This document shows, piece by piece, positions 2,658-63,408 of a stretch of DNA of 64,000 bases (within the stretch, counting starts at the first letter, position 1; every line of letters begins with the position of its first letter). A program made the position numbers and the translations under genes. The stretch lies in NCBI RefSeq assembly GCF_006345805.1, contig NC_043000.1, positions 54,746,001-54,810,000 of the forward strand, written 5' to 3'. The notes beneath the pieces are model-generated. The model saw nothing but the letters and a program-made list of their open reading frames with translations. It searched no databases and was not told the origin of the DNA. The stretch comes from Octopus sinensis (lineage: Eukaryota).

Positions 2658-3339
2658 TATACATATATACATTTACATATTTATGCATATATATACGTGT
2701 GTACGTAACGTAACTTCTTGCTACATTGTTATATGTGTAAGTGTGCATGGGTGTGCGTATTAATTTATATATTGCAATTTACTAATAAACTTCAATAGTC
2801 ATCTAACGGTACTCAACAGACTTTGACAAGGGATATAGACTATCTTATGGTGCATTTCACACAGCAATAAAATATTCTATATTACACATACAATAATTTT
2901 ATCGAGTGTAATGTGGCGAAATATCATACAATCTATATGTCCATTTTTGTGACTAATGTTTCAAGATATGCAAAGACCACATTTAATGAAAACATTAATG
3001 AAGTTGGTCAATGTAACTGGTTCGGCATGATTGTATCGCACCTGGTATCTACCATATAAAGACACATTAATAAATTTTATATTGTATGAATGTATGTATC
3101 GTATATTCTTTGCATAGTATCAGATCACACCAGTGAAGGAATATACATAAACTCATGCACAAATACATACACAAATCGTCCTCTCTCATATCATTATCCT
3201 CCTCCTCTCCTACCCCTCTCTCTCTCTCTCTCTCACTCTCTCCGTGCATATATGTGTACGTATATTTTTATACATACATATATATATGCATGCATCAGTA
3301 TGTGTGTATGTACTACACAAGCACACACATATGTATCTA

Positions 3340-5215
<1,876 letters not shown>

Positions 5216-5306
5216 TACTTACTTTGATACTTACTTTGATAGGTTTCGGCCATTATTGGCCCAGGCCATGTCTAACTTAATAGCACCACCTGGTGAAGTC
5301 TTCAAG

Positions 5307-8300
5307 TCAGAATTTGGGCACTATGGCCCACTCAAGTAGAGAGTTATTGTTTACAGAGACATATCCAGGTGTAGGGGGTTTATCCGGGATTTCTTGAAGG
5401 AATCTGTCCAAAGACTTCTTGAACCCTATAGGGTCAGTTTCTGTTTTAATGTGTTTTGGTGTAATGTTAAAGAGAGCGGGGCCAATTGAGGTGAAATAAT
5501 TGTGCCGTATTGTTGTTATGAGATGAGAGTGCGATTTTTGTTTGGGGGCGGATGGCACGGGGCCCAAGCCTTGGATGTACCTTAAAGGTGATGCCAACAT
5601 CATTTGGGCAATGCTGATGGAATATTTTCCACATCATGCAGATGATGTAGCGCTCACGACGACGTTGGAGAGAATAGAGTTTTAGCTTTTCTAGCCGACC
5701 CCAATAGTCGAGGCCTGTCATGCCATCTATCTTTTTTGTGATTGCCCTTTGAGGTGCTTCAACTTTTATGATACCTTGTATTGTGTGGGGAGACCACAGT
5801 GGACAACAGTATTCAAGGTGGGGTCGGGCAAAAGTGGAGAAGAGAAGGATAATGGTGTGGATATCTCTCGACTGGAAAGTTCTGAGAATCCAGGAACACA
5901 TTCTGCGGGCCATGTCAACTTTGGTGTTTATATGAGTGGCCCAGCTTACGTTGTGTCCACAATTACTCCCAAGTCTCTGATGTTGTTGGACGCCGCGAGA
6001 GTTTCACCTGAAGGAAGGGAGTATGGGAGTTTCAGGGCATCCTCTTTTCCAAAGTGGATTAGCTCAAATTTATCCTCGTTCAGCAGCATATTGTTTTTTT
6101 CTGCCCATTGGATAACAGCCAGTAGATCTGACTGAAGGCATGTCCGGTCACTCGCCTCATTTATGACCTTCTGTAGCTTGGAGTCATCTGCAAAGATTTT
6201 TATGTTGCTGTGCTTGATGGTGTCATTAATGTCATTAATGTAAATGATGAAAAGAAGTGGGCCTAGCACAGTGCCTTGCGGAACGCCACTACTGACTTTG
6301 GCTGGGCTTGATTTTACCCCTTCAACTACAACATGTTGAGATCTGTCTGTCAGGAAACACTCAATCCATTTCAGTAACTTTCCAGAGACACCAATGTTGG
6401 ATAGTTTTTTCAATAGGATCTTGTGATCGACCCTGTCGAAGGCCTTACTGAAATCAAGGTAGATGACATCGGTGTTGGAGCCCTCTCCCAAAGCTCTCAA
6501 AATGTCCTCAAAGTGATCAGGAGCTGCGTTAGGCAGTCCCTTCCATTACGGAACCCATGTTGGTTGGAGATCAGCCGTCTGTTGCTTTCCAGAAATTGGG
6601 TTATTCGAGATCTCACCACCCTCTCAAATACCTTGATGATATGAGAGGTGAGTGAGATCGGGCGGTAATTCACTGCAAGGGACTTGTTTCCCTTTTTGAA
6701 AACTGGGACAACAGACTGGGACAGAAGGTTTTTTGGAATATAGCCAGCATCCAGTGAGTTTCTCCACAGATTAGCAAGGGGAGATGCAAGTTGGTGTCGA
6801 CACACCTTCAGGACACAAGCAGGGAATCTATCGGGGCCTACTGCTGAATTGTGTTTATTTCGTTTATCGCCGCTAAGACATCAGGGGCACTAAACGTTAT
6901 GTCCGATATAGTGTGTTGGGGGTTGACATCACTGATACAGCCCAGATCGGCCATATCAGGATTGCTGAAAACAGAGCAGTAGTTGTTTCTGCAGTATCTC
7001 GGCCATGGATTTGGCATTATCTTGGAGAGTGCCAGTTTCGTCAATTAGAGGGCCTACAGTGGGACACAGTGACCCTGCGTTTCCTCGCAAATGAAAAGAA
7101 CACTTTGGGGTTGAGTTTGATTTTTTCAATGGCCCACTTCTCCTCAGCTGATCTTTGGTTATTGATGAGGGTCTTCATGCATTGTTGGAGGTTATATTTT
7201 TTGGATTCAAGCAGTGCGATAGCCGTCGAATGTGTGTGTTGCTGTTGGCAGTACTTTAGTTTGTTAATTTTTTTGTTTGTTCTTTTTATTTTTCTGATAA
7301 TGGTTTTTCTGTTTTGGGGGATTCTGCACTTTTTGTTCACAGGTCTTGGTGGGGAGTGTTTTGCACATATGTCTGTGACGGTTGACAAAGATCTGCCAAG
7401 ATGTTTTATGGTTGGTGGAGATGTGTGTATGTGTAAAGGACCAGTCAACATTTGATAGCTCGTTCCTGATTGCATCCCAGTTGGCTTTATGGAGATCCAT
7501 GTTGTCAAATGGGTGGGCTGGAGGAAGGTCACTAGGATTAGCTTTCGGCTGGTGGAATTTCATGTTACAGAGAACCATGTCATGGTCTGAAAGAAGGGTT
7601 TTTTCCACTGTAACGTTATGTATAGTGTTAGTGTGGTTACTAAACACTAGGTCCAAAATGTTCTGATGTCTTGTTGGTGCAAGGACAAGTTGGGACAAGA
7701 AAAACTCATTCGTAAAGTCGAAAAGTGACTCTGCTGCTTCTTTGTCAGCGGTTGAGGCGGGAGTGCTTGGTTTCAAACAGTTTGTAGTCCAGTCAACACA
7801 GGGTAGATTGAAGTCTCCCATCATGAGTATGTTGCTAGAATGGCACTGTTGAATAAAGCACTTAATGCTGTTGAGGCATTCTTTAAAGCACAGTATGGGT
7901 GTTTGGGGCGGCCTATAGAGCCCAATTACTGTCAGGTCATTGGCTTTGTTGTGCACGGTGACTGATTCACAGTAGCCGTTGGAGAATATACTATTTCCAT
8001 CTGCCGTAAATGAATCATGCAGGAAAATGGCAGTTCCACCTTCCTCCTGCCGATACGATCCGCGCGCGCGGATGGTTGTGAAATTCTTCACTCTCACTTC
8101 GGCTTCCAAGTGGGAGTTGTCAAGGTGGGTCTCAGTGAGAATGAAGAAAGGGATGTGGTGTGAATGGTTACCAACCCAGTCTTCAATGAATTGGACCTTC
8201 CATTTTTGTGCATTGATGGAAGGGCTGACACCTTGTGCATTGAGTAGGAATGTGGAGGTTAGTGTAGTGGCTGGTTTTGACTGTTGCAGGGGGCTTGGAT

Positions 8301-8418
8301 TTTTTGTGTGTGTGTTAGTGGCAGCAATGTGGGGAATTGGTGCACTGGGGTAATAGCATAGGATGGTGTGAGTGATGGCTAGAATGTTTTTGTGTATCTC
8401 TTTTGCCATGTTCAACAT
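5307..8418 (-). CDS. LINE-A ORF2: APE endonuclease plus reverse transcriptase, split by several 1-bp frameshifts
   Basis: ORF-track pieces 7264-8418, 7041-7532, 6838-7044, 6497-6805, 5946-6500, 5467-5913 and 5307-5603 are collinear parts of one CR1 ORF2. Confidence 0.9.
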
Positions 8419-8420
8419 GG

Positions 8421-9536
8421 CTAAAAAAGAATTTTCCTGCTTAGGGAGCAGTTTTTGGCTGGAGGTGTGGTTGCACTGTTGGATAGGGTTGTAGTTTCCA
8501 CTTTTGTTGTTGTTGTTTTTGTGTCTTCCTGAAAAGACTGGACCAGCATTACTGCAGCATGGTGTGTTCTATTTTTATTGTTATTCAGGTTTGTGTGTGG
8601 CTTGGGGGCCCCGTTTCTGTTTGTGCGTCGGGTCCCTGGAAGATGAGTGAAGGGACAGTCACTCAGTAGACATGTTCTCTCACGTTGGGAATACCGGCAG
8701 ATTTTGGGACTCCGAGTTGTGTGTGTTTTGAATTTCGATTTACTATTTGGTGGTGTTGATGTCATGGGATGCGTGCTTTGGCCTTGGCCGGTAGTGCGTC
8801 TAGTGCCGGGTAGATGCGTGAAGATGCAGTCACTATTTGTGCAGAGTCTCTGGCGCAGTGAATAGCGGCATATTTGGGGATTTCTTGTTTGTGCCGTGGG
8901 GGGCGCATTCTGCTTCCTATGTTTCTTTAAGTTTTTGTTACTGCAGTAGTATTGAGGTGGTGATGTGGGGAAGAGGGCAGTGGTTTCTTATTTGGTTTTC
9001 TGTCGGTATTTTTGGTGATAGAAGACGATGGTGGCAGCGGTGTGGTGATGATGATGATAATTGTGGTGGTTGCTGTGAGAGCGGTGAAAAGATACTGGTA
9101 TTTAGTGAATCGTCTAGTAAGCTAGAGTTGAGGAGTGGCTGTGTTGTTCTTGTTGCTGTGGCTGTTGTTGTGTTGTTGTGCCTGACCGATGTCAGGGTCA
9201 GCCATTGTGCTGGGAACCAGGAGTGGCTCATTCTGTTGTTGTTGTTGTTGTTGTGGCTGCTGATTTTCTAGCTGTTGTTGTTCTTGAACTGTGAAAATAT
9301 GTAGAAGCTTTTCATAATGGCCTCTTATCAGTTTGAAAGATACTTCGATATGTTTCAACTTGCTACGAATCTGTTTGACGGATCGTGTGTTGACCACTTG
9401 ATGTTTTTTCGGCAATCTCATTCAAACACAAGACATTTAGATTTTCTGTTTGGGAAAGAGAAAGCCATGTGTTTATTAAAACATCAATTTCGTTATCAGA
9501 CCAATTTCGTCTGTTGCAGGCCTGCAAGTTAGTCAT
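8421..9536 (-). CDS. LINE-A ORF1 (frameshifted): Myb/SANT-like domain, Q-rich linker, two CCCH zinc fingers
   Basis: ATG at 9536 gives MTNLQACNRRNWSDNEIDVLINTW...EIAEK. Removing one base from the T6 run at 9404-9409 continues it into HQVVNTRSVKQIRSKLKHIEVSFK. C-x8-C-x4-C-x3-H motifs lie at 8814-8870 and 8643-8699. Confidence 0.75.
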
Positions 9537-9879
9537 GTTTGTTTTTCTTTTGTTTGTTTTCCTTTTGATTTTTGAAAATATATATATTCTTTCTTGGAGT
9601 TAAAGAAGTGTATATATATATAATGTTCTCTCTTAAGGGTGTGAGTTTTTGATTATTTGGTTGTTTGAGATATTAAAAGAAAAACAGTTGTATATAACAA
9701 TTTGTAGTTAAATGAAAACGTACTTACGGGTTTGTAGGCAAACACGTGGTTACAAATATATATATATTTAAGGTCAGTTAGTTTTGAAGCTGTGTAGCTT
9801 GCTACTGACTTGGGAGAGAAACAAATAGACGTCCGTCCACTTCAACAGTTAATCCAGTCCGTCCACTTCAACAGTTAAT

Positions 9880-11457
<1,578 letters not shown>

Positions 11458-25761: not shown

Positions 25762-25970
25762 TTATTTTGGCTCAAAGCCAGCATTCCTAAGAGTAAGCGG
25801 CAAGTCGATTACATTGAAACCAGTGCTCGACTGGCCCTCTTTTATATTCCGTTCCCGAAGGGATGAAAGGCAAAGTCGATACCAACGTAACTCGAAGCCA
25901 GAAAATAGAGACGGATGAAATGAACTAAGCATTTTGTCCGGCGTGATAATGAGTCTGTCAGTATACTCCT
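25762..25970 (-). mobile_element. SINE family 1, diverged copy
   Basis: AAGTCGATTACATTGAAACCAGT...GGATGAAAGGCAAAGTCGA. Confidence 0.75.
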
Positions 25971-25984
25971 TTAATAAAAATGCT

Positions 25985-25987
25985 ACT

Positions 25988-26040
<53 letters not shown>

Positions 26041-26053
26041 AATAATAATAATG

Positions 26054-26116
<63 letters not shown>

Positions 26117-26347
26117 TTAATAATAATAATTAGAAGAAGAAGAAGAAGAAGAAGAAGAAGACCACAAGCCAGCAAATTCAGGAAAATGATAAGTCGATTA
26201 CATCGAAGGATTAGTTCAGCTGGTACTCCTTTTATAGAGGCCGACAAGTTGGAACACGAGAACTCAGAACGTAGATTGCTACACGAAACACCACTAAACA
26301 GTTTTATCCGTACTATAACTATTCTGCTACGTCGCCGCCTCAATTTG

Positions 26348-26419
<72 letters not shown>

Positions 26420-26482
26420 AATAGTAATAATAATAATAATACTAATACTAATAATAATAATAACAATGATAATAATAATAAC

Positions 26483-26535
<53 letters not shown>
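25985..26535. repeat. (AAT)n, (AAG)n and (ACT)n tracts flanking a diverged minus-strand SINE at about 26140-26340
   Basis: Direct reading; SINE motifs AAGTCGATTACATCGA, GAACTCAGAACGTA and CGCCGCCT. Confidence 0.85.
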
Positions 26536-26537
<2 letters not shown>

Positions 26538-27406
26538 CACGAATATGGAAGAATTTTTTTTTTTTATATCAGCGTATTTATTGAAAAGTTATTCGAAAGA
26601 TACATACTTGCTGGCTACAGAAAATCATGAAATGCATTTATTGGAATATATACTTACACAGAGACATGAATTAATTTTCCTCATTTCACATGGCATGTCT
26701 AAGAGTTTATTCTAAAATTATATAAATACCCTTGAATGATTATATATCTTGACAAAACCCGAATCAGCCCACTAAGGTAAATACTACTTTCTGAAATTTT
26801 AAGCCAAATGGCGCCAGCAAGGAAAGGATCATAATAAGATTTCTCCAATTAATGTCTCATGTTACATAATTGTAAGTGAGAGAAAGTATTCTGCAGATAA
26901 AACTTTTTCCCGTGTTGTATCTCTCTTTTACAAATATGTTATTCTCTCTATTTATTGAAAACTGGAATATGGAATATGGAATATTAAAATTGGAATAATA
27001 ACACTCTGAAGCACACACTGAAGTATATATACACACTCGTGAGCACACACAGAACACACAATTATCTTATATACGTATAATACAACATACACGTATGTGT
27101 GTGTGTGTAGATCTGTACATAACAATTGATATGTATATTAAGTATATACATGTGGGAGTATGTGTGCATATATGAATGTATGTTTATGTGTGCAGATGAA
27201 AACAAAAAAAAGCAAACATAAATATCAAGTCAGTCATATACAATGTCACTTACTAATAAATTCCCCCTCAGTCTTTCACACACACAAACACACACGCACG
27301 CACACACATGTATATATATATAAATTTATCTTCCTATTTGGATTATATATATACATGCATATATACATATAAATATATAATATATATATATATTATATGT
27401 ATATAT

Positions 27407-38689: not shown

Positions 38690-40753
38690 AATTTTATTTA
38701 GTTTCAGTTCACAAGCTGTGGCCATGCTGGGGCACCACCATTTGGTGTTGCTACATGATTTTACTTCACGAATGCTTTTTAGCAAATGCCATCAGGTGCA
38801 TGAGAGAGTTTGATGCAGCTGCCCTCATCTGCACCTCCTACCGTGAAGTTGGATCATCTGGGACACCTGACAAGATGAGATCCCGTTTCATTTTAAAGAC
38901 ATCTGCATCCACTCCATGCAGGTCTCTTAGGTTCTTCGGGAGGATATTGAAGAGCTGTGGGCCTCTGAAGCCCAGGCTATCACAGTATCTTGTCCTACAT
39001 CTTGATGGCAAATTTGGAGTCCTTGGCACTATGCAGTGGCGCCCAGTTCTGGCATTTGTGTAACTCTCGATGCCAAAGTTTGGTACAAGTTCTTCTAGGA
39101 CCTTCCAGATGTATATTATGGCATATCTTTCTCGCCTACGCTCTAAGGAATAGAGTCTCAATCTCTTGAGTCTTTCCCAATAGCATATATACAGCACAGA
39201 GGCTATCTTCTTCGTGTATCTTCGTTGGATCGCCTCAAGTTCTGTGATTAACTTGACACTGGATGGTGACCATAGATGTGAGCAATAGTCAAAGTGGCTT
39301 AGGACAAGTGTCCTCCAGAGGACCATCATGGTTTCCTGGTCTCTTGTTCTAAATGTTCTAAGAATCCACCCGGTCAGCCGCCTACATTTCATTCCCAATT
39401 TAGCAACATGCACATGTTGCATAATCACTCATGTAAATACCCAGGTCTCGCACTGATTGTGCCTTTGGGATTGCAATTCCTCCAGGTCCAGTGTATTTAT
39501 TGGGTATTGCATTTAGTTTTGCATGCTGATAGCATAAAGCTTGAAACTTTTCAGTATTGAACTGCATGCTATTCTTTTCAGCCCACTTGTATATTTTGTC
39601 CAGCTCACATTGCAGGTGCTTAGTGTCTTCAGGGTTCTGTATTGCCTGTGAAACTTTTGTATCATCTGCATAACTTGTGATCGTGGCTCTCTGCGTGGTT
39701 GAGGGCATGTCTGAGAGGGCCATTATGAACAGTAGTGGTCCCAGAACAGTGCCTTGCGGAACACCGCTCACTATTTGCGTGTTAATGGAAGTGGCTACTA
39801 CCACCTCATTTCCATTGGCTGCTACCACCTGATTTCTATCCTTCAGAAAGTCATGAAGCCATTCTCCCAATTTTCCAACTATGTTTGTGACATATCATTC
39901 CATGATCGACTTTATCAAAGGCCTTTGCAAAGTCGAAATATATGATTTCTACATGTGAGTGGTTGAGCAGTCGTTTCAGCACCCAGTCATAGTGTTGTAG
40001 GTATCTGAGTTAAGCAGCTTCTTCCTGGTCAGAAACCATGTTGGGTGTCAGGCAGCAAGTCATTTTCTTCAAGGAAGGTGATTAGTTTTCTTCTGACTAT
40101 TCGTTCGATGACCTTGCTGACGTGTTAGGTCAGAGCGATAGGTCTGTAGTTTTTGGCCTCCGCTCTGCTACCTCCTTTATGAATAGGGCACATTTTACCT
40201 TCCTTCAGTTTTCTTGGAAGTTTGCCAGTTGCAAGGAAGCTCTGAAAGAGGAAATGCAGTGGTCTTGCTAGGACTCTCTTACATACTTTTAGAAGGATTG
40301 CTGGGAATCCATCGGGGCCAGTAGCTGAGTTTGTTTTCATCAATAGCCTTTATTACATCGTCTTCCTTTATATTGATGTAATCAATCATCGCTGCCTCTG
40401 ATTTTATATCTGCAGTGGTAAAGAAGTCAGTTGGATTGCTGACTTGAAAATGCTCTAGGGGTGGAGTGAAAATACTCTTGAATTGCTCATTTCGTATTTC
40501 ACTTACCCTCATTGGATTTCCTGTGAGTGTGCCATCCTTTTCAAGGAGTGGCTCTATCCTACAGTGCACCTAGCTGTTTCTTTGGCATACCCGTAGAAAG
40601 CTCTGGGGTTAGATTGTATGTTGTCTATATCCCAGGCTTCTTTGTCTGCTTTTTCTTTTTCATGGGAGAGTTGCAGACATTTTTCAATTTCCAACAGTTT
40701 TATTTTCAGGCGGGACTTTTCACTGCTTTCAATTTGTTTGTTTAGGCGATTTG

Positions 40754-50323: not shown

Positions 50324-51135
50324 TAGTTTTATTTTTATAGCGTGCTTTCACTTCACTACCGAGCGCAGCTCTGTGTGCCTTGGGAATGTGCTGTGATTTG
50401 TTGTGATGCTTTGATGGTTTTTCTGTATGTTATATGTGTTTGTAAGTCCTGGTGTTTTTGTTATGTATTTGTCTGAATATTTTTTATCATGCCTAATGCA
50501 CCTACTATGATAGGAATTGTTTCTGTTTTCAGATTCCACATTCTAGTTACCTCTATTTCCATGTCTTTGTATTTTGAGAGTTTCTCCATTTCTTTTAGAG
50601 ACACGTTATCATTTGCCGGTATTGATACATCAATTAGAAAGCACTTTTTTTCTTCATGATCTCTGACAACTATATCTGGTCTGTTGGCCTTAATTTCTCT
50701 ATCTGTGTGTATCGGCATATCCCAGAGTATGGTTGCTTTCTCGTTTTCTGTGACCTTTTCTGGTGTGTGCCTATACCATCTTTTTTCTGTTGTTATTCCA
50801 TAATGTTGGCATAGCTTCCAATGTATGTAGGTTCCAACTCTGTCATGTCTGTGAATATATTCCTTCTTAGCCAGGACTGGGCAGCTAGAGATAATATGAT
50901 TTATTGTTTCTTGTCCATCTCCACATATTCTGCAGTTACTTGTAATATTTCTTTTCATTACACGTTTTTAGTAATTTCTGGTGTGGAGGCTTTGGTCTTG
51001 TGCTGCAATTAAGAATCCCTCTGTTTCTGCTTTGAGTCCTGAGCTTCTCAACCATTGCTGGGATTTTTCTTTGTCTATTTCTTTTGCGTTTAGTTTAGTC
51101 CAGTATTTACCACGTATTTATTATTCCAGTATTTA
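50321..51135 (-). mobile_element. 5'-truncated R4/Dong-like RLE LINE (zinc knuckle plus restriction-like endonuclease)
   Basis: LKAETEGFLIAAQDQ, CRICGDGQETINHIISSC (C-x2-C-x8-H-x4-C), RPDIVV, FLIDVSIP and EKLSKYKD. (AAT)n on both sides. Confidence 0.92.
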
Positions 51136-62174: not shown

Positions 62175-63408
62175 CAGGGATTGGACAAAATACTGCAAAT
62201 ACCTAGCATCATAGCATCAAAATCTTCAAATGTCTATAAAACCGTCAAAAGCGTGTTTATTGTCAGTTTTTTTTTATTATTAGTGTCGCTCAATATGTTT
62301 TGTTAAAATAGCTGTTTCTTTTCAGATATCATCAGAAAAAGATAACTAAAATTCATTAAAATGACAGATATACCGGACATTCAAAGAGGTCAAATTGTTG
62401 GCGCTCGTATGTCAGGTGCTAGCTTAACGAAAACAGCCGAAATATTTGGTATATCAAGAAGTACTGTCTCGAAAGTAATGACAGCCTTTGAGAAAGAGGG
62501 AAAACATCCTCGTCGAAACAAGACTCCGGAAGGGAACCAAAACTTTCAGAGAGGGACCGTCGGACTCTTATACGAATTGTTCAAAAGGATCACAAAAGTA
62601 CAGCTCCCAAAACTACTGCAGAGCTTAATAACCACCTCGAAAACCCAGTTTCTACAAAAGCTGTTCACCGGGAGCTGCACGAAGCCGGATTTCGCGGGAG
62701 GGCTGCAATCAGTAAACCACTATTTGAAAAACAAACGTTGCAAAGCGTTTAGAGTGGAGTAAAGACCTACATAATTGGTCCCTAGAGTAGTGGGAAAATG
62801 TTATTTTCTCGGACAAGTCATCCTTTGCCACATTTCCGACCGAGTATACGTGCGGAGACAGCCAAAAGAACCATTTGATCCAGACTGCCTTCTTCCAACT
62901 GTTAAACATGGAGGAGGGTTTGTAATAATCGGGATTGGAAATCAGCCGGCACAATGGTTTACCTTCATGGCCGAATTAGTAGTCAACACTAAACATTTTA
63001 TCTGATCAAATTCATCCTATGGTTGCGTTAGTGTTTCCGGAGAGAAACGCAATGTTTTAGGATGATAATGCACCAATTCACACAGCTAAAGTTGTTACTG
63101 AATGGCACGAGGAACAGTCTAATGAAGTTGAACATCTTATTTTGTTACTACAGTCCCCTCATCTCGATATTATTGAACATTTAGAAAAACAAGTAAGGAG
63201 TCGATATCTTCCGCCATCATCACTACAAGAAGTGGAAACTGTTTTAGCTGAAGAATGGACAAAAATACTTTTGGAAACAATTCAAGCTTTGTACCAGCCC
63301 ATGCCTCGTAGAATTCAAGCTGTAATTACTGTCAAACGCGGTCTTACCCATATTAAAATAAATTCGCTTGAAATTTTAAGGTCTTTCCATTATTTTGTCC
63401 AACCCACG
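62175..63408 (+). mobile_element. Tc1-like DNA transposon, about 1.23 kb, with decayed transposase
   Basis: Imperfect TIRs of about 30 bp (CAGGGATTGGACAAAATACTGCAAATACCT / AGGTCTTTCCATTATTTTGTCCAACCCACG) in TA context. Motifs RGQIVGAR..GAS, ISRSTVSKV, VIFSDKS, TVKHGGG, DDNAPIH, SPHLDIIEH and MPRRIQAVI; frameshifts and stops. Confidence 0.92.

What the first reader, a model, noticed from the sequence alone, without database searches (positions are those of the whole stretch)
9270..9536. Hidden Myb/SANT-like (trihelix) domain at the N-terminus of a CR1 ORF1
Seen: not in the ORF track as one piece. One base removed at 9404-9409 gives RRNWSDNEIDVLINTWLSLSQTENLNVLCLNEIAEKHQVVNTRSVKQIRSKLKHIEVSFK. 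Known: this follows the Myb_DNA-bind_4/MSANTD pattern W(S/T)xxExxxLIxxW...EIAEK...R(S/T)xxQxxxKxxxLxxxY; such domains occur in PIF/Harbinger ORFs, and R2 uses ZnF+Myb for target recognition. The usual helix-2 Trp is absent here. Inference: a captured DNA-binding domain plus RNA-binding CCCH fingers could tether the RNP to DNA and might explain insertion in (TA)n.
Basis: partly seen in the sequence, partly recalled or inferred. Interest (0 to 1): 0.82.

Follow-up and report, generated by a model that had tools for sequence, protein, structure and literature searches.

The report
Myb-like domain in a LINE ORF1
A dead copy of a jumping gene (a CR1-like LINE, probably in a cephalopod genome) starts with a small three-helix Myb/SANT-like domain ahead of its RNA-binding zinc fingers, and four related copies share it, so it is a real and apparently undescribed variant of the element's first protein; that it binds DNA or steers insertion into (TA)n repeats is untested.

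Summary
On the minus strand, window 9536-9263 encodes a roughly 90-residue domain split by one frameshift. It sits at the 5' end of a decayed 4.66-kb LINE (5215-9877). That LINE has two CCCH fingers, an APE endonuclease, a reverse transcriptase and a hairpin plus 12-mer-repeat 3' tail.

Four other loci from public assemblies carry the same domain at 32-56% identity, uninterrupted across the window's lesion. In three of them CCCH fingers follow. In one (L002) the same-family EN/RT follows as well.

Between copies, synonymous sites are saturated while pN is 0.27-0.42, so the domain was kept by selection.

Pfam PF13837 (Myb_DNA-bind_4) is the top hit for four of the five copies:
- intact relative P0023: 31.7 bits
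- family consensus: 36.2 bits
- window copy: 22.9-26.3 bits
- curated cut-off: 27 bits
- reversed control: no Myb hit

The structure test failed to decide. AlphaFold gave three helices at pLDDT about 60, with no Foldseek or GT-1 match.

DNA binding and a role in (TA)n targeting are untested. TA-type junctions recur in four copies, but endonuclease preference and 3'-tail microhomology explain them equally well.

Verdict: a new variant of a known kind (modular LINE ORF1), of moderate interest.

The parts
9537..9877 (-). Putative 5' UTR and 5' end of the LINE. It starts directly after the (TA)n array with a 26-nt tandem duplication (TAACTGTTGAAGTGGACGGAC[TGGAT], 9877-9831). The true 5' boundary is uncertain, because short internal (TA)5-6 patches lie near 9577-9589, 9610-9623 and 9755-9769.
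   Evidence: Sequence reading. TRF places the (AT)n array at 9878-11456. There is no homology to the 5' regions of L002 or L004 beyond window 9558.
9402..9536 (-). N-terminal half of the Myb/SANT-like domain: ATG at 9536, helix 1 (NWSDNEIDVLINTW) and helix 2 (LNEIAEKT).
   Evidence: Translation. Family HMM hit at 9536-9399, 55.5 bits. Pfam PF13837.
9401..9409 (-). Frameshift lesion. An orphan T at 9401 lies next to the A6 run at 9404-9409. Relatives carry one more residue here, which suggests a 2-nt deletion.
9290..9400 (-). C-terminal half of the Myb/SANT-like domain: a basic helix 3 (NTRSVKQIRSKLKHIEVSFKLIRGHYEKLLHIF) with hydrophobic residues at a regular 4-3 spacing.
   Evidence: Translation. 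Family HMM hit at 9457-9272. Charge analysis.
9122..9289 (-). Poly-Q / low-complexity linker, ending in a stop codon at 9122-9124 in this decayed copy.
   Evidence: A Q-rich or S-rich linker follows the domain in all relatives.
8814..8870 (-). CCCH zinc finger 1 (CRYSLRQRLCTNSDCIFTH; C-x8-C-x4-C-x3-H).
   Evidence: Pfam zf-CCCH_2 E 7.8e-4, below cut-off. Conserved in L001, L002, L004 and L006.
8643..8699 (-). CCCH zinc finger 2 (CRYSQRERTCLLSDCPFTH).
8421..8987 (-). Open C-terminal part of ORF1 (188 codons plus the stop at 8421-8423), in the same frame as the Myb N-terminal half.
5307..8418 (-). ORF2: APE-type endonuclease (open ORF 7264-8418) and reverse transcriptase, broken into at least six pieces in different frames (7041-7532, 6497-6805, 5946-6500, 5467-5913, 5307-5603).
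   Evidence: ORF list. Pfam Exo_endo_phos_2 8.2e-14 and RVT_1 3.5e-21. Homologues P0001-P0022.
5215..5306 (-). 3' UTR: a GGCC...GGCC hairpin followed by (TATCAAAGTAAG)x2.2 at 5215-5241, with no poly(A). It abuts (TA)n directly.
   Evidence: (fold z = -2.67). It is 86% identical over 72 nt to the Argonauta copy.
3329..5217 (.). Flanking (TA)n array on the 3' side of the element.
   Evidence: TRF.
9878..11456 (.). Flanking (TA)n array on the 5' side of the element. Together with 3329-5217 it forms one array split by the insertion.
   Evidence: TRF.

Best explanation
Window 9536-9263 (minus strand) is the frameshifted remnant of a Myb/SANT-like three-helix domain of the Pfam PF13837 type. This domain forms the N-terminal module of the first protein of a small LINE family, CR1-like in anatomy and probably from a cephalopod host.

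In working elements the 5' coding region reads: Myb/SANT-like domain (acidic helix 1, basic helix 3), a Q/S-rich linker, two CCCH fingers and a tail. ORF2 (APE endonuclease + RT) follows, then a 3' hairpin and a short tandem repeat.

Shown here: the domain exists, it is conserved under purifying selection, and it is physically linked to the CCCH fingers and to the EN/RT.

Inferred: the CCCH fingers hold the element's RNA. The basic helix 3 of the Myb-like domain contacts double-stranded DNA or chromatin, so ORF1p helps bring the RNP to AT-rich or (TA)n DNA. There the endonuclease nicks at TA, and the ...AGTAT 3' tail pairs with the nicked repeat to prime reverse transcription.

The confidence of 0.7 applies to the identity and architecture. 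For the DNA-binding role I would give about 0.45, and for Myb-determined (TA)n targeting about 0.15-0.2.
For: Profile evidence:
- PF13837 is the top hit for four of the five copies, always over profile positions 1-2 to 68-75 of 89.
- Scores: P0023 31.7 bits (E 2e-7), L002 26.9, window 26.3, P0024 15.5. The family consensus scores 36.2 bits (E 7.9e-9). The reversed consensus gives no Myb hit.

Homologues:
- L002 is 53-54% identical (E 1e-26 to 5e-30) in one frame across the window's lesion.
- P0023, P0024 and P0025 came from an exhaustive phmmer search.
- The family HMM scores 130-155 bits in L002, L004, L005 and L006.

Linkage:
- The order Myb, then Q/S-rich linker, then CCCH holds in the window, L002, L004 and L006.
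- L002 continues into EN (59% identity) and RT (81-84% identity) of the same family.

Selection: pN 0.27-0.42 against pS 0.72-0.93 in nine of the ten pairs. The close pair L005/L006 has pS 0.36 and pN/pS 0.81.

Fold and charge: AlphaFold predicts three helices at the expected positions. The first 45 residues carry a net charge of -2 to +2 and the rest (helix 3) +3 to +7; domain pI is 8.9-10.2.

Junctions:
- The window copy has (TA)n on both sides.
- L006 is 5'-truncated against (AT)n, and L005 abuts (TRTA)n.
- L001 is inserted at AATA|TAAGG.
Against: - The window copy alone is below the Pfam cut-off (22.9-26.3 against 27 bits), and P0025 gives no hit.
- Only one of the three canonical Trp positions is kept.
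- Both AlphaFold models have a pLDDT of about 60. Foldseek against the PDB gives nothing below E = 1.
- hhalign of the family against the solved trihelix GT-1 (2JMW) aligns only the W..E...LI motif, at probability 0.7%.
- A profile search of the PDB returns only GCN4-type coiled coils, at E 0.05-0.2.
- All five copies are damaged between the Myb part and the fingers, so a single ORF is not proven.
- The Argonauta relative (L001) has CCCH fingers but no Myb domain.
- (TA)n covers 7.6% of the window, so an insertion there is not very improbable by chance.
- L002 and L004 show no (TA)n within about 350 nt upstream.
Confidence: 0.7

Rival explanations
1. The domain is real, but it works as an oligomerisation or protein-interaction module rather than a DNA binder. 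On this reading the long amphipathic helix 3 and the poly-Q tract form a coiled coil that multimerises ORF1p, as the coiled coil does in L1 ORF1p. Alternatively the domain acts as a SANT-type histone or partner-binding module.
For: - Helix 3 is predicted to be 29-46 residues long.
- Hydrophobic residues at I57, L61, I64, F68, I71, Y75, L78 and F82 follow an unbroken 4-3 spacing that is conserved in the family.
- The only PDB profile hits are GCN4-type isoleucine zippers, and they are not significant (E 0.05-0.2).
- A poly-Q tract follows directly.
Against: - The Pfam match covers all three helices, not just helix 3.
- Helix 3 is strongly basic, as in DNA-binding Myb domains and unlike acidic SANT domains.
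- The coiled-coil hits are not significant.
- The two roles do not exclude each other.
Confidence: 0.25
2. The (TA)n location has nothing to do with the Myb-like domain. It would follow from the APE endonuclease's preference for TA steps, from pairing of the element's ...AGTAT 3' tail with nicked (TA)n, and from the sheer abundance of (TA)n in this genome.
For: - (TA)n covers 7.6% of the window.
- The element ends in TAT directly fused to ATAT....
- The Argonauta copy, which has no Myb domain in the copy itself, also sits at a TA step, AATA|TAAGG.
- From established knowledge: CR1/L2-type LINEs prime reverse transcription through 3'-tail microhomology.
Against: - Three Myb-bearing copies have TA-type microsatellite at a resolvable junction (window, L006, L005).
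- The PHD-type relative L003 and a second tail in L001 do not.
- The sample is far too small to separate the two explanations.
Confidence: 0.5
3. The Myb-like reading frame is a separate small upstream ORF (an 'ORF0' of about 150 aa), not the N-terminus of the CCCH ORF1.
For: - The only copy with an uninterrupted Myb ORF (L004, P0023, 157 aa) ends in a stop before the finger, which lies in another frame.
- In both the window and L004, the finger frame is offset by +2 from the Myb C-terminal frame.
Against: - In L002 and L006 the Myb frame is the same as that of the first finger.
- L004 has a stop codon immediately before its finger, so it is damaged there too.
- No copy shows a start codon for a separate finger ORF.
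Confidence: 0.2
4. It is a chance resemblance, or an unrelated gene or transposon fragment (for example a Harbinger Myb-like gene) that merely lies next to the LINE.
For: - The window copy alone is sub-threshold in Pfam.
- There is no other copy in the window.
- The word-indexed protein search gave no hit.
Against: - The same order and spacing recur in four loci at 32-56% identity.
- Selection on the protein is evident.
- The neighbours are EN and RT, not a DDE transposase.
- The consensus passes the Pfam cut-off and the reversed control does not.
Confidence: 0.03

Closest known systems
Pfam PF13837 Myb_DNA-bind_4 (Myb/SANT-like, trihelix / GT-1 / MSANTD type)
   Same: - It shares the W-S-x-x-E-x-x-x-L-I-x-x-W helix 1 and the R-S-x-x-Q-I-x-x-K-L-x-x-I-x-x-x-Y/F basic helix 3.
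- Three helices are predicted.
- The profile match covers positions 1-75 of 89.
   Different: - The Trp residues of helices 2 and 3 are replaced by I/V and L.
- There is no detectable similarity to the solved GT-1 domain beyond helix 1.
- A single-sequence search of 1.84 billion proteins reaches no ordinary Myb/SANT protein.
- The context is a retrotransposon ORF1, not a transcription factor.
R2 retrotransposon N-terminal zinc finger + Myb module (PMC10499050, PMC11204384)
   Same: It is a non-LTR retrotransposon that combines zinc fingers with a Myb-type three-helix domain at the N-terminus of an element protein. In R2 this module reads the target DNA.
   Different: - R2 has a single ORF with a restriction-like endonuclease, C2H2 fingers and a canonical Myb, all on the same polypeptide as the RT.
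- Here the endonuclease is APE-type, the fingers are CCCH (usually RNA-binding), the domain is PF13837-type, and it sits in ORF1 rather than on the RT protein.
- No homology to R2 was shown.
ORF1 types of CR1/L2/Jockey-superfamily LINEs (Khazina & Weichenrieder types I-V; Metcalfe & Casane 2014, PMC4120745)
   Same: - ORF1 is modular and exchanged among lineages.
- Relatives found here show this: a PHD-type ORF1 in L003 and L012, and CCCH-only ORF1 in L001 and L010.
   Different: - The catalogued modules are RRM, CCHC, coiled coil/CTD, PHD, esterase and zf/leucine zipper.
- Neither Myb/SANT nor CCCH appears in that paper (0 occurrences), nor in two later CR1 and mollusc LINE papers.
Myb-like second ORF of PIF/Harbinger DNA transposons (own knowledge: Sinzelle et al. 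2008; Pfam family notes)
   Same: A transposon-encoded Myb/SANT-like (trihelix) protein that binds DNA and recruits the catalytic protein.
   Different: - No DDE transposase or TIRs are present here.
- No Harbinger protein was reached by the exhaustive search, so no donor can be named.
Myb-like region in ORF2 of the telomere-specific R1-clade LINEs TRAS/SART
   Same: An APE-type LINE with a Myb-like motif proposed to help recognise a simple tandem-repeat target.
   Different: - There it lies between EN and RT in ORF2, not in ORF1.
- It is a different LINE clade with a different target, (TTAGG)n.
L1 ORF1p coiled coil (PMC5940361)
   Same: An N-terminal helical region of ORF1p upstream of the RNA-binding part. 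Helix 3 here has a heptad-like pattern.
   Different: - No sequence similarity.
- Here only about 3.5 heptads are present, and they are embedded in a three-helix domain with a Pfam Myb match.

Membership tests
Pfam PF13837 Myb_DNA-bind_4 | Profile score at or above the curated gathering cut-off (27 bits) | tested here: met
Met at the family level: P0023 31.7 bits and the family consensus 36.2 bits, with a clean reversed control. L002 scores 26.9 bits. These three are just below the cut-off.
Pfam PF13837 Myb_DNA-bind_4 | Three-helix bundle fold matching solved Myb/SANT/trihelix structures | tested here: inconclusive
   AlphaFold gives three helices, but mean pLDDT is only 60.9 and 60.4. Foldseek against the PDB gives no match below E = 1. 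hhalign against GT-1 (2JMW) gives probability 0.7%. The alignment had only five sequences.
Pfam PF13837 Myb_DNA-bind_4 | Regularly spaced aromatic (Trp) core residues in the three helices | tested here: not met
   Only the helix-1 Trp (W12) is invariant. The helix-2 position is I/V and the helix-3 position is L/I in all five copies. From own knowledge, such substitutions occur in bona fide Myb/SANT domains, so this weakens the assignment but does not exclude it.
Pfam PF13837 Myb_DNA-bind_4 | Binds double-stranded DNA | not testable with these tools
   Only indirect evidence: helix 3 carries a net charge of +3 to +7, and domain pI is 8.9-10.2.
CR1-clade non-LTR retrotransposon | ORF2 with an APE-type endonuclease followed by a reverse transcriptase | tested here: met
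   Exo_endo_phos_2 at 8.2e-14. RVT_1 at 3.5e-21.
CR1-clade non-LTR retrotransposon | 3' end with a hairpin and a short tandem repeat instead of poly(A) | tested here: met
   (TATCAAAGTAAG)x2.2 at 5215-5241. Hairpin fold with z = -2.67. The 3' end is conserved in the Argonauta copy. This feature is shared with L2 and Rex1, so it is not specific to CR1.
CR1-clade non-LTR retrotransposon | RT groups with CR1 reference elements in a phylogeny | not testable with these tools
No labelled reference RT set (Repbase) was available. The homologues found carry no clade names. I can vouch only for 'CR1/L2-like anatomy'.
CCCH zinc finger (zf-CCCH_2 / Nab2 type) | C-x7-8-C-x4-5-C-x3-H spacing, conserved among relatives | tested here: met
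   There are two fingers with C-x8-C-x4-C-x3-H spacing. They are conserved in L001, L002, L004 and L006. Pfam zf-CCCH_2 gives E 7.8e-4 and 20.3 bits, below the 25.8-bit cut-off.
R2-type ZnF+Myb targeting module | The module is on the same polypeptide as the RT, with a restriction-like endonuclease | tested here: not met
   The domain lies in the ORF1 region, separated from ORF2 by the stop at 8421-8423, and the endonuclease is APE-type.
PIF/Harbinger Myb-like ORF | A neighbouring DDE (DDE_Tnp_4) transposase gene and terminal inverted repeats | tested here: not met
   The neighbouring ORFs are CCCH, EN and RT. The same holds in L002.

The most novel reading that the evidence does not exclude
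An APE-type, CR1-like LINE whose ORF1 protein carries a sequence-specific Myb/SANT DNA-binding domain that steers the RNP to (TA)n microsatellites. Target choice would then be made by ORF1p rather than by the endonuclease or by an RT-linked domain as in R2. I know of no such mechanism described for the CR1/Jockey superfamily.
Probability: 0.15. Interest if true: 0.75.

Novelty: new variant of a known kind. Interest (0 to 1): 0.5.

Why it matters
LINE ORF1 proteins are known mainly as RNA binders and chaperones. Their catalogued modules are RRM, CCHC, coiled coil, PHD and esterase.

A conserved Myb/SANT-like domain fused to, or placed just upstream of, CCCH fingers adds a likely double-stranded-DNA or chromatin reader to that list. 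It gives a concrete, testable candidate for how an APE-type LINE could choose its sites through ORF1p.

This bears on the long-standing question of what ORF1p does at the target. It is also of practical interest now that site-specific non-LTR elements such as R2 are being developed for DNA insertion.

If the domain turns out to be only an oligomerisation module, the finding is one more example of ORF1 modularity in an under-studied phylum.

Tried and rejected
- Word-indexed protein searches with the Myb part and with the CCCH part gave no hit.
- Two scans of the JGI metagenome contigs, one by protein pattern and one by a 24-nt DNA motif, gave only chance matches.
- An exact look-up of the window's EN ORF found it not on record, so the source genome could not be named.
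- The cluster look-up found all relatives to be unnamed singletons.
- A paper search for the sample accessions gave nothing useful.
- Sequence search of the PDB with the single protein and with the family profile gave only insignificant hits: a germination protein, poly-Q proteins and GCN4 zippers.
- Two AlphaFold jobs and two Foldseek searches gave low-confidence models and no match.
- hhalign against the GT-1 trihelix found nothing.
- The family HMM against six-frame translations of the relatives L001, L003, L010 and L012 found no Myb-like domain.
- I considered using L004 as proof of linkage to ORF2 and rejected it. Its 1093-aa ORF2 belongs to a different LINE (RT 36-41% identical, EN not detectably similar), so it is a nested insertion or a chimera.
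- I considered that the (AT)n arrays flanking L001 show (TA)n targeting and rejected it. That copy sits inside a palindromic foldback element, not in the arrays themselves.
Full report
**1. What is in the sequence**

The feature lies on the minus strand. From an ATG at 9536 one frame reads MTNLQACNRRNWSDNEIDVLINTWLSLSQTENLNVLCLNEIAEKT, ending at 9402. From 9400 a second frame reads QVVNTRSVKQIRSKLKHIEVSFKLIRGHYEKLLHIF, then a poly-Q tract, then a stop at 9122.

All four relatives found later have one more residue at this point (K-T-V-x-L-F), and a single T is stranded at 9401. A 2-nt deletion is therefore the more likely lesion. This is a detail: both repairs restore the same domain.

**2. The element around it**

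The segment is the 5' coding end of a decayed non-LTR retrotransposon occupying 5215-9877 on the minus strand. Downstream of it lie:
- a Q-rich linker;
- two CCCH fingers (CRYSLRQRLCTNSDCIFTH at 8870-8814 and CRYSQRERTCLLSDCPFTH at 8699-8643), with Pfam zf-CCCH_2 at E 7.8e-4, below the cut-off;
- the ORF1 stop at 8421-8423;
- an APE-type endonuclease (open ORF 8418-7264; Exo_endo_phos_2 at 8.2e-14);
- a reverse transcriptase broken into several frames (RVT_1 at 3.5e-21);
- a 3' UTR with a GGCC...GGCC hairpin (fold z = -2.67) and (TATCAAAGTAAG)x2.2, with no poly(A).

The element splits one long (TA)n array, 3329-5217 and 9878-11456. There is no second copy in the window.

**3. Relatives**

Word-indexed searches with the Myb part and with the finger part found nothing. 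The endonuclease found 22 proteins. The only named close one is from the octopod Argonauta hians, so a cephalopod host is likely, although the window's source could not be identified.

Fetching contigs gave the following.
- **L002** (EN 59% and RT 81-84% identical to the window copy) carries the same N-terminal domain at 379-657. It is 53-54% identical (E 1e-26 to 5e-30) and reads in a single frame across the window's lesion. A poly-Q tract, CCCH fingers and EN/RT follow.
- An exhaustive phmmer search of 1.84 billion representatives with the repaired domain found exactly three proteins, P0023, P0024 and P0025. Their contigs are L004, L005 and L006.
- In L004 and L006 the domain is again followed by a Q/S-rich linker and CCCH fingers.
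- L005 is interrupted by a piggyBac-type fragment.
- L004 continues into an intact ORF2 of a different LINE, so it is nested or chimeric. I do not count it as ORF2 linkage.

A family HMM scores 130-155 bits in these four loci and finds both halves in the window.

**4. Selection**

In nine of the ten copy pairs the domain has pN 0.27-0.42 while pS is 0.72-0.93, which is saturated. Where dN/dS can be computed for these pairs it is 0.13-0.25. The closely related pair L005/L006 has dN/dS 0.75, as expected for post-insertion decay.

The domain has therefore been maintained as protein through the divergence of these sublineages. It belongs to the working element.

**5. Is it Myb/SANT-like?**

By sequence profile, yes.
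- PF13837 (Myb_DNA-bind_4) is the top hit for four of the five copies, always over profile positions 1-2 to 68-75 of 89.
- The intact relative P0023 scores 31.7 bits (E 2e-7), above the curated 27-bit cut-off.
- The family consensus scores 36.2 bits (E 7.9e-9). Its reversed sequence gives no Myb hit.
The helix-2 and helix-3 Trp positions are I/V and L throughout the family.
- The first 45 residues (helices 1-2) carry a net charge of -2 to +2 and the rest (helix 3) +3 to +7. This fits a DNA-reading Myb better than an acidic SANT domain.

By structure, the question is undecided.
- Two AlphaFold runs on five-sequence alignments gave three helices at the right places, but pLDDT was about 60.
- Foldseek against the PDB gave nothing below E = 1.
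- hhalign against the solved GT-1 trihelix (sequence checked against 2JMW) aligned only the W..E...LI motif.
- The PDB profile search returned only insignificant GCN4-type zippers.

Those zipper hits, the 29-46-residue predicted helix 3 and its unbroken 4-3 hydrophobic spacing keep an oligomerisation role alive as a rival or as an additional function.

**6. One ORF or two?**

- In L002 and L006 the Myb frame equals the frame of the first finger.
- In the window the Myb N-terminal half is in frame with the fingers.
- In the window and L004 the Myb C-terminal frame is offset by +2 from the fingers, and L004's intact 157-aa ORF stops before its finger.
- Every copy carries stops or shifts in the linker.

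I take a single ORF1 as more likely, but I cannot prove it.

**7. Distribution among relatives**

- The Argonauta copy (L001, 8926-12878) has CCCH fingers but no Myb-like domain. Its 5' end lies only 83 nt before its ORF1 ATG, so either 5' truncation or a Myb-less lineage is possible.
- L010 has a multi-CCCH ORF1, cut by the contig end.
- L003 and L012 have PHD-type 5' regions.

The picture is a CCCH-ORF1 group of LINEs in which one sublineage carries the extra N-terminal domain. This is consistent with the modular, reticulate ORF1 evolution described for the Jockey superfamily (PMC4120745). No donor can be named, because the exhaustive search reached no ordinary Myb/SANT protein.

**8. The (TA)n idea**

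Resolvable junctions are as follows.
- The window copy has (TA)n on both sides.
- L006 is 5'-truncated directly against (AT)n.
- L005 abuts (TRTA)n.
- L001 is inserted at AATA|TAAGG inside a foldback element.

Against this:
- L002 and L004 show no (TA)n in about 350 nt upstream.
- A second, more distant 3' tail in L001 and the PHD-type L003 are not in (TA)n.
- (TA)n covers 7.6% of the window.

A TA or (TA)n preference for the family is plausible. However, the endonuclease and pairing of the ...AGTAT tail with nicked (TA)n explain it without any Myb contribution. With five copies the two explanations cannot be separated.

**9. Comparison with what is known**

- R2 uses N-terminal zinc fingers plus a Myb domain to read its rDNA target (PMC10499050, PMC11204384). 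In R2 these sit on the RT polypeptide, with a restriction-like endonuclease.
- PIF/Harbinger elements encode a separate Myb/SANT-like protein (own knowledge).
- R1-clade TRAS/SART elements were reported to have a Myb-like motif inside ORF2 (own recollection, not verified here).

The ORF1 catalogues I could read list RRM, CCHC, coiled coil/CTD, PHD, esterase and zf/leucine zipper. They mention neither Myb/SANT nor CCCH. Targeted full-text searches found no description of a Myb-like domain in a LINE ORF1. Absence from that library is not proof of novelty.

**10. Verdict**

- It is not confirmed structurally.
- The functional inference is untested.

This is a new variant of a known kind, of moderate interest (0.5). 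The interest would rise if ORF1p-borne DNA targeting were shown.

Noticed in passing
window 5215-5306 and L001:12803-12872: The LINE's 3' UTR (hairpin plus 12-mer tandem repeat) is 86% identical over 72 nt between the window and the Argonauta copy. The ORF2 DNA of the same two copies is only about 65% identical. This suggests the 3' UTR is the RT recognition element.
   Followed up: partly
window 9831-9877 (minus strand): The 5' end of the element begins with a 26-nt unit (TAACTGTTGAAGTGGACGGACTGGAT), repeated once in truncated form, directly against the (TA)n array.
   Followed up: no
L001 8464-8925 and 12879-12930: The Argonauta LINE copy is inserted inside a roughly 460-nt palindromic foldback (MITE-like) element, whose arms can be rejoined across the LINE. 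The foldback is itself flanked by (AT)n arrays.
   Followed up: partly
L004 1282-4563: A Myb+CCCH ORF1 remnant is followed by an intact 1093-aa EN+RT ORF of a different LINE (RT 36-41% identical). This is either a nested 5'-truncated insertion or a genuine ORF1/ORF2 chimera.
   Followed up: partly
L005 575-934: A piggyBac-type transposase fragment (DDE_Tnp_1_7, E 9e-8) lies about 200 nt downstream of the Myb-like ORF and interrupts that LINE copy.
   Followed up: partly
window 38838-39870 (-), 50461-50958 (-), 62361-62762 (+): Other transposon debris is present: an RT fragment of another LINE (RVT_1 at 4e-12), a zf-RVT C-terminal fragment, and a Tc1/mariner-like HTH_28 ORF.
   Followed up: partly
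window 25762-26584: Long low-complexity tracts translate as poly-Leu, poly-Ile or poly-Asn runs in overlapping ORFs on both strands. This is probably simple-sequence DNA rather than a gene.
   Followed up: no
L012 3180-4163: In a distant relative the ORF upstream of the PHD-EN-RT ORF has a YqaJ-like exonuclease domain (E 1.3e-13). It is either an unusual neighbour or an unusual ORF1 for a LINE.
   Followed up: no
L010 1-765: A related LINE family (EN 38% identical) has an ORF1 with several CCCH-like fingers (for example CPLYLESKCPHGMRGVNCKYEH). CCCH-type ORF1 therefore seems widespread in this group, although it is absent from the published ORF1 classifications I could read.
   Followed up: partly
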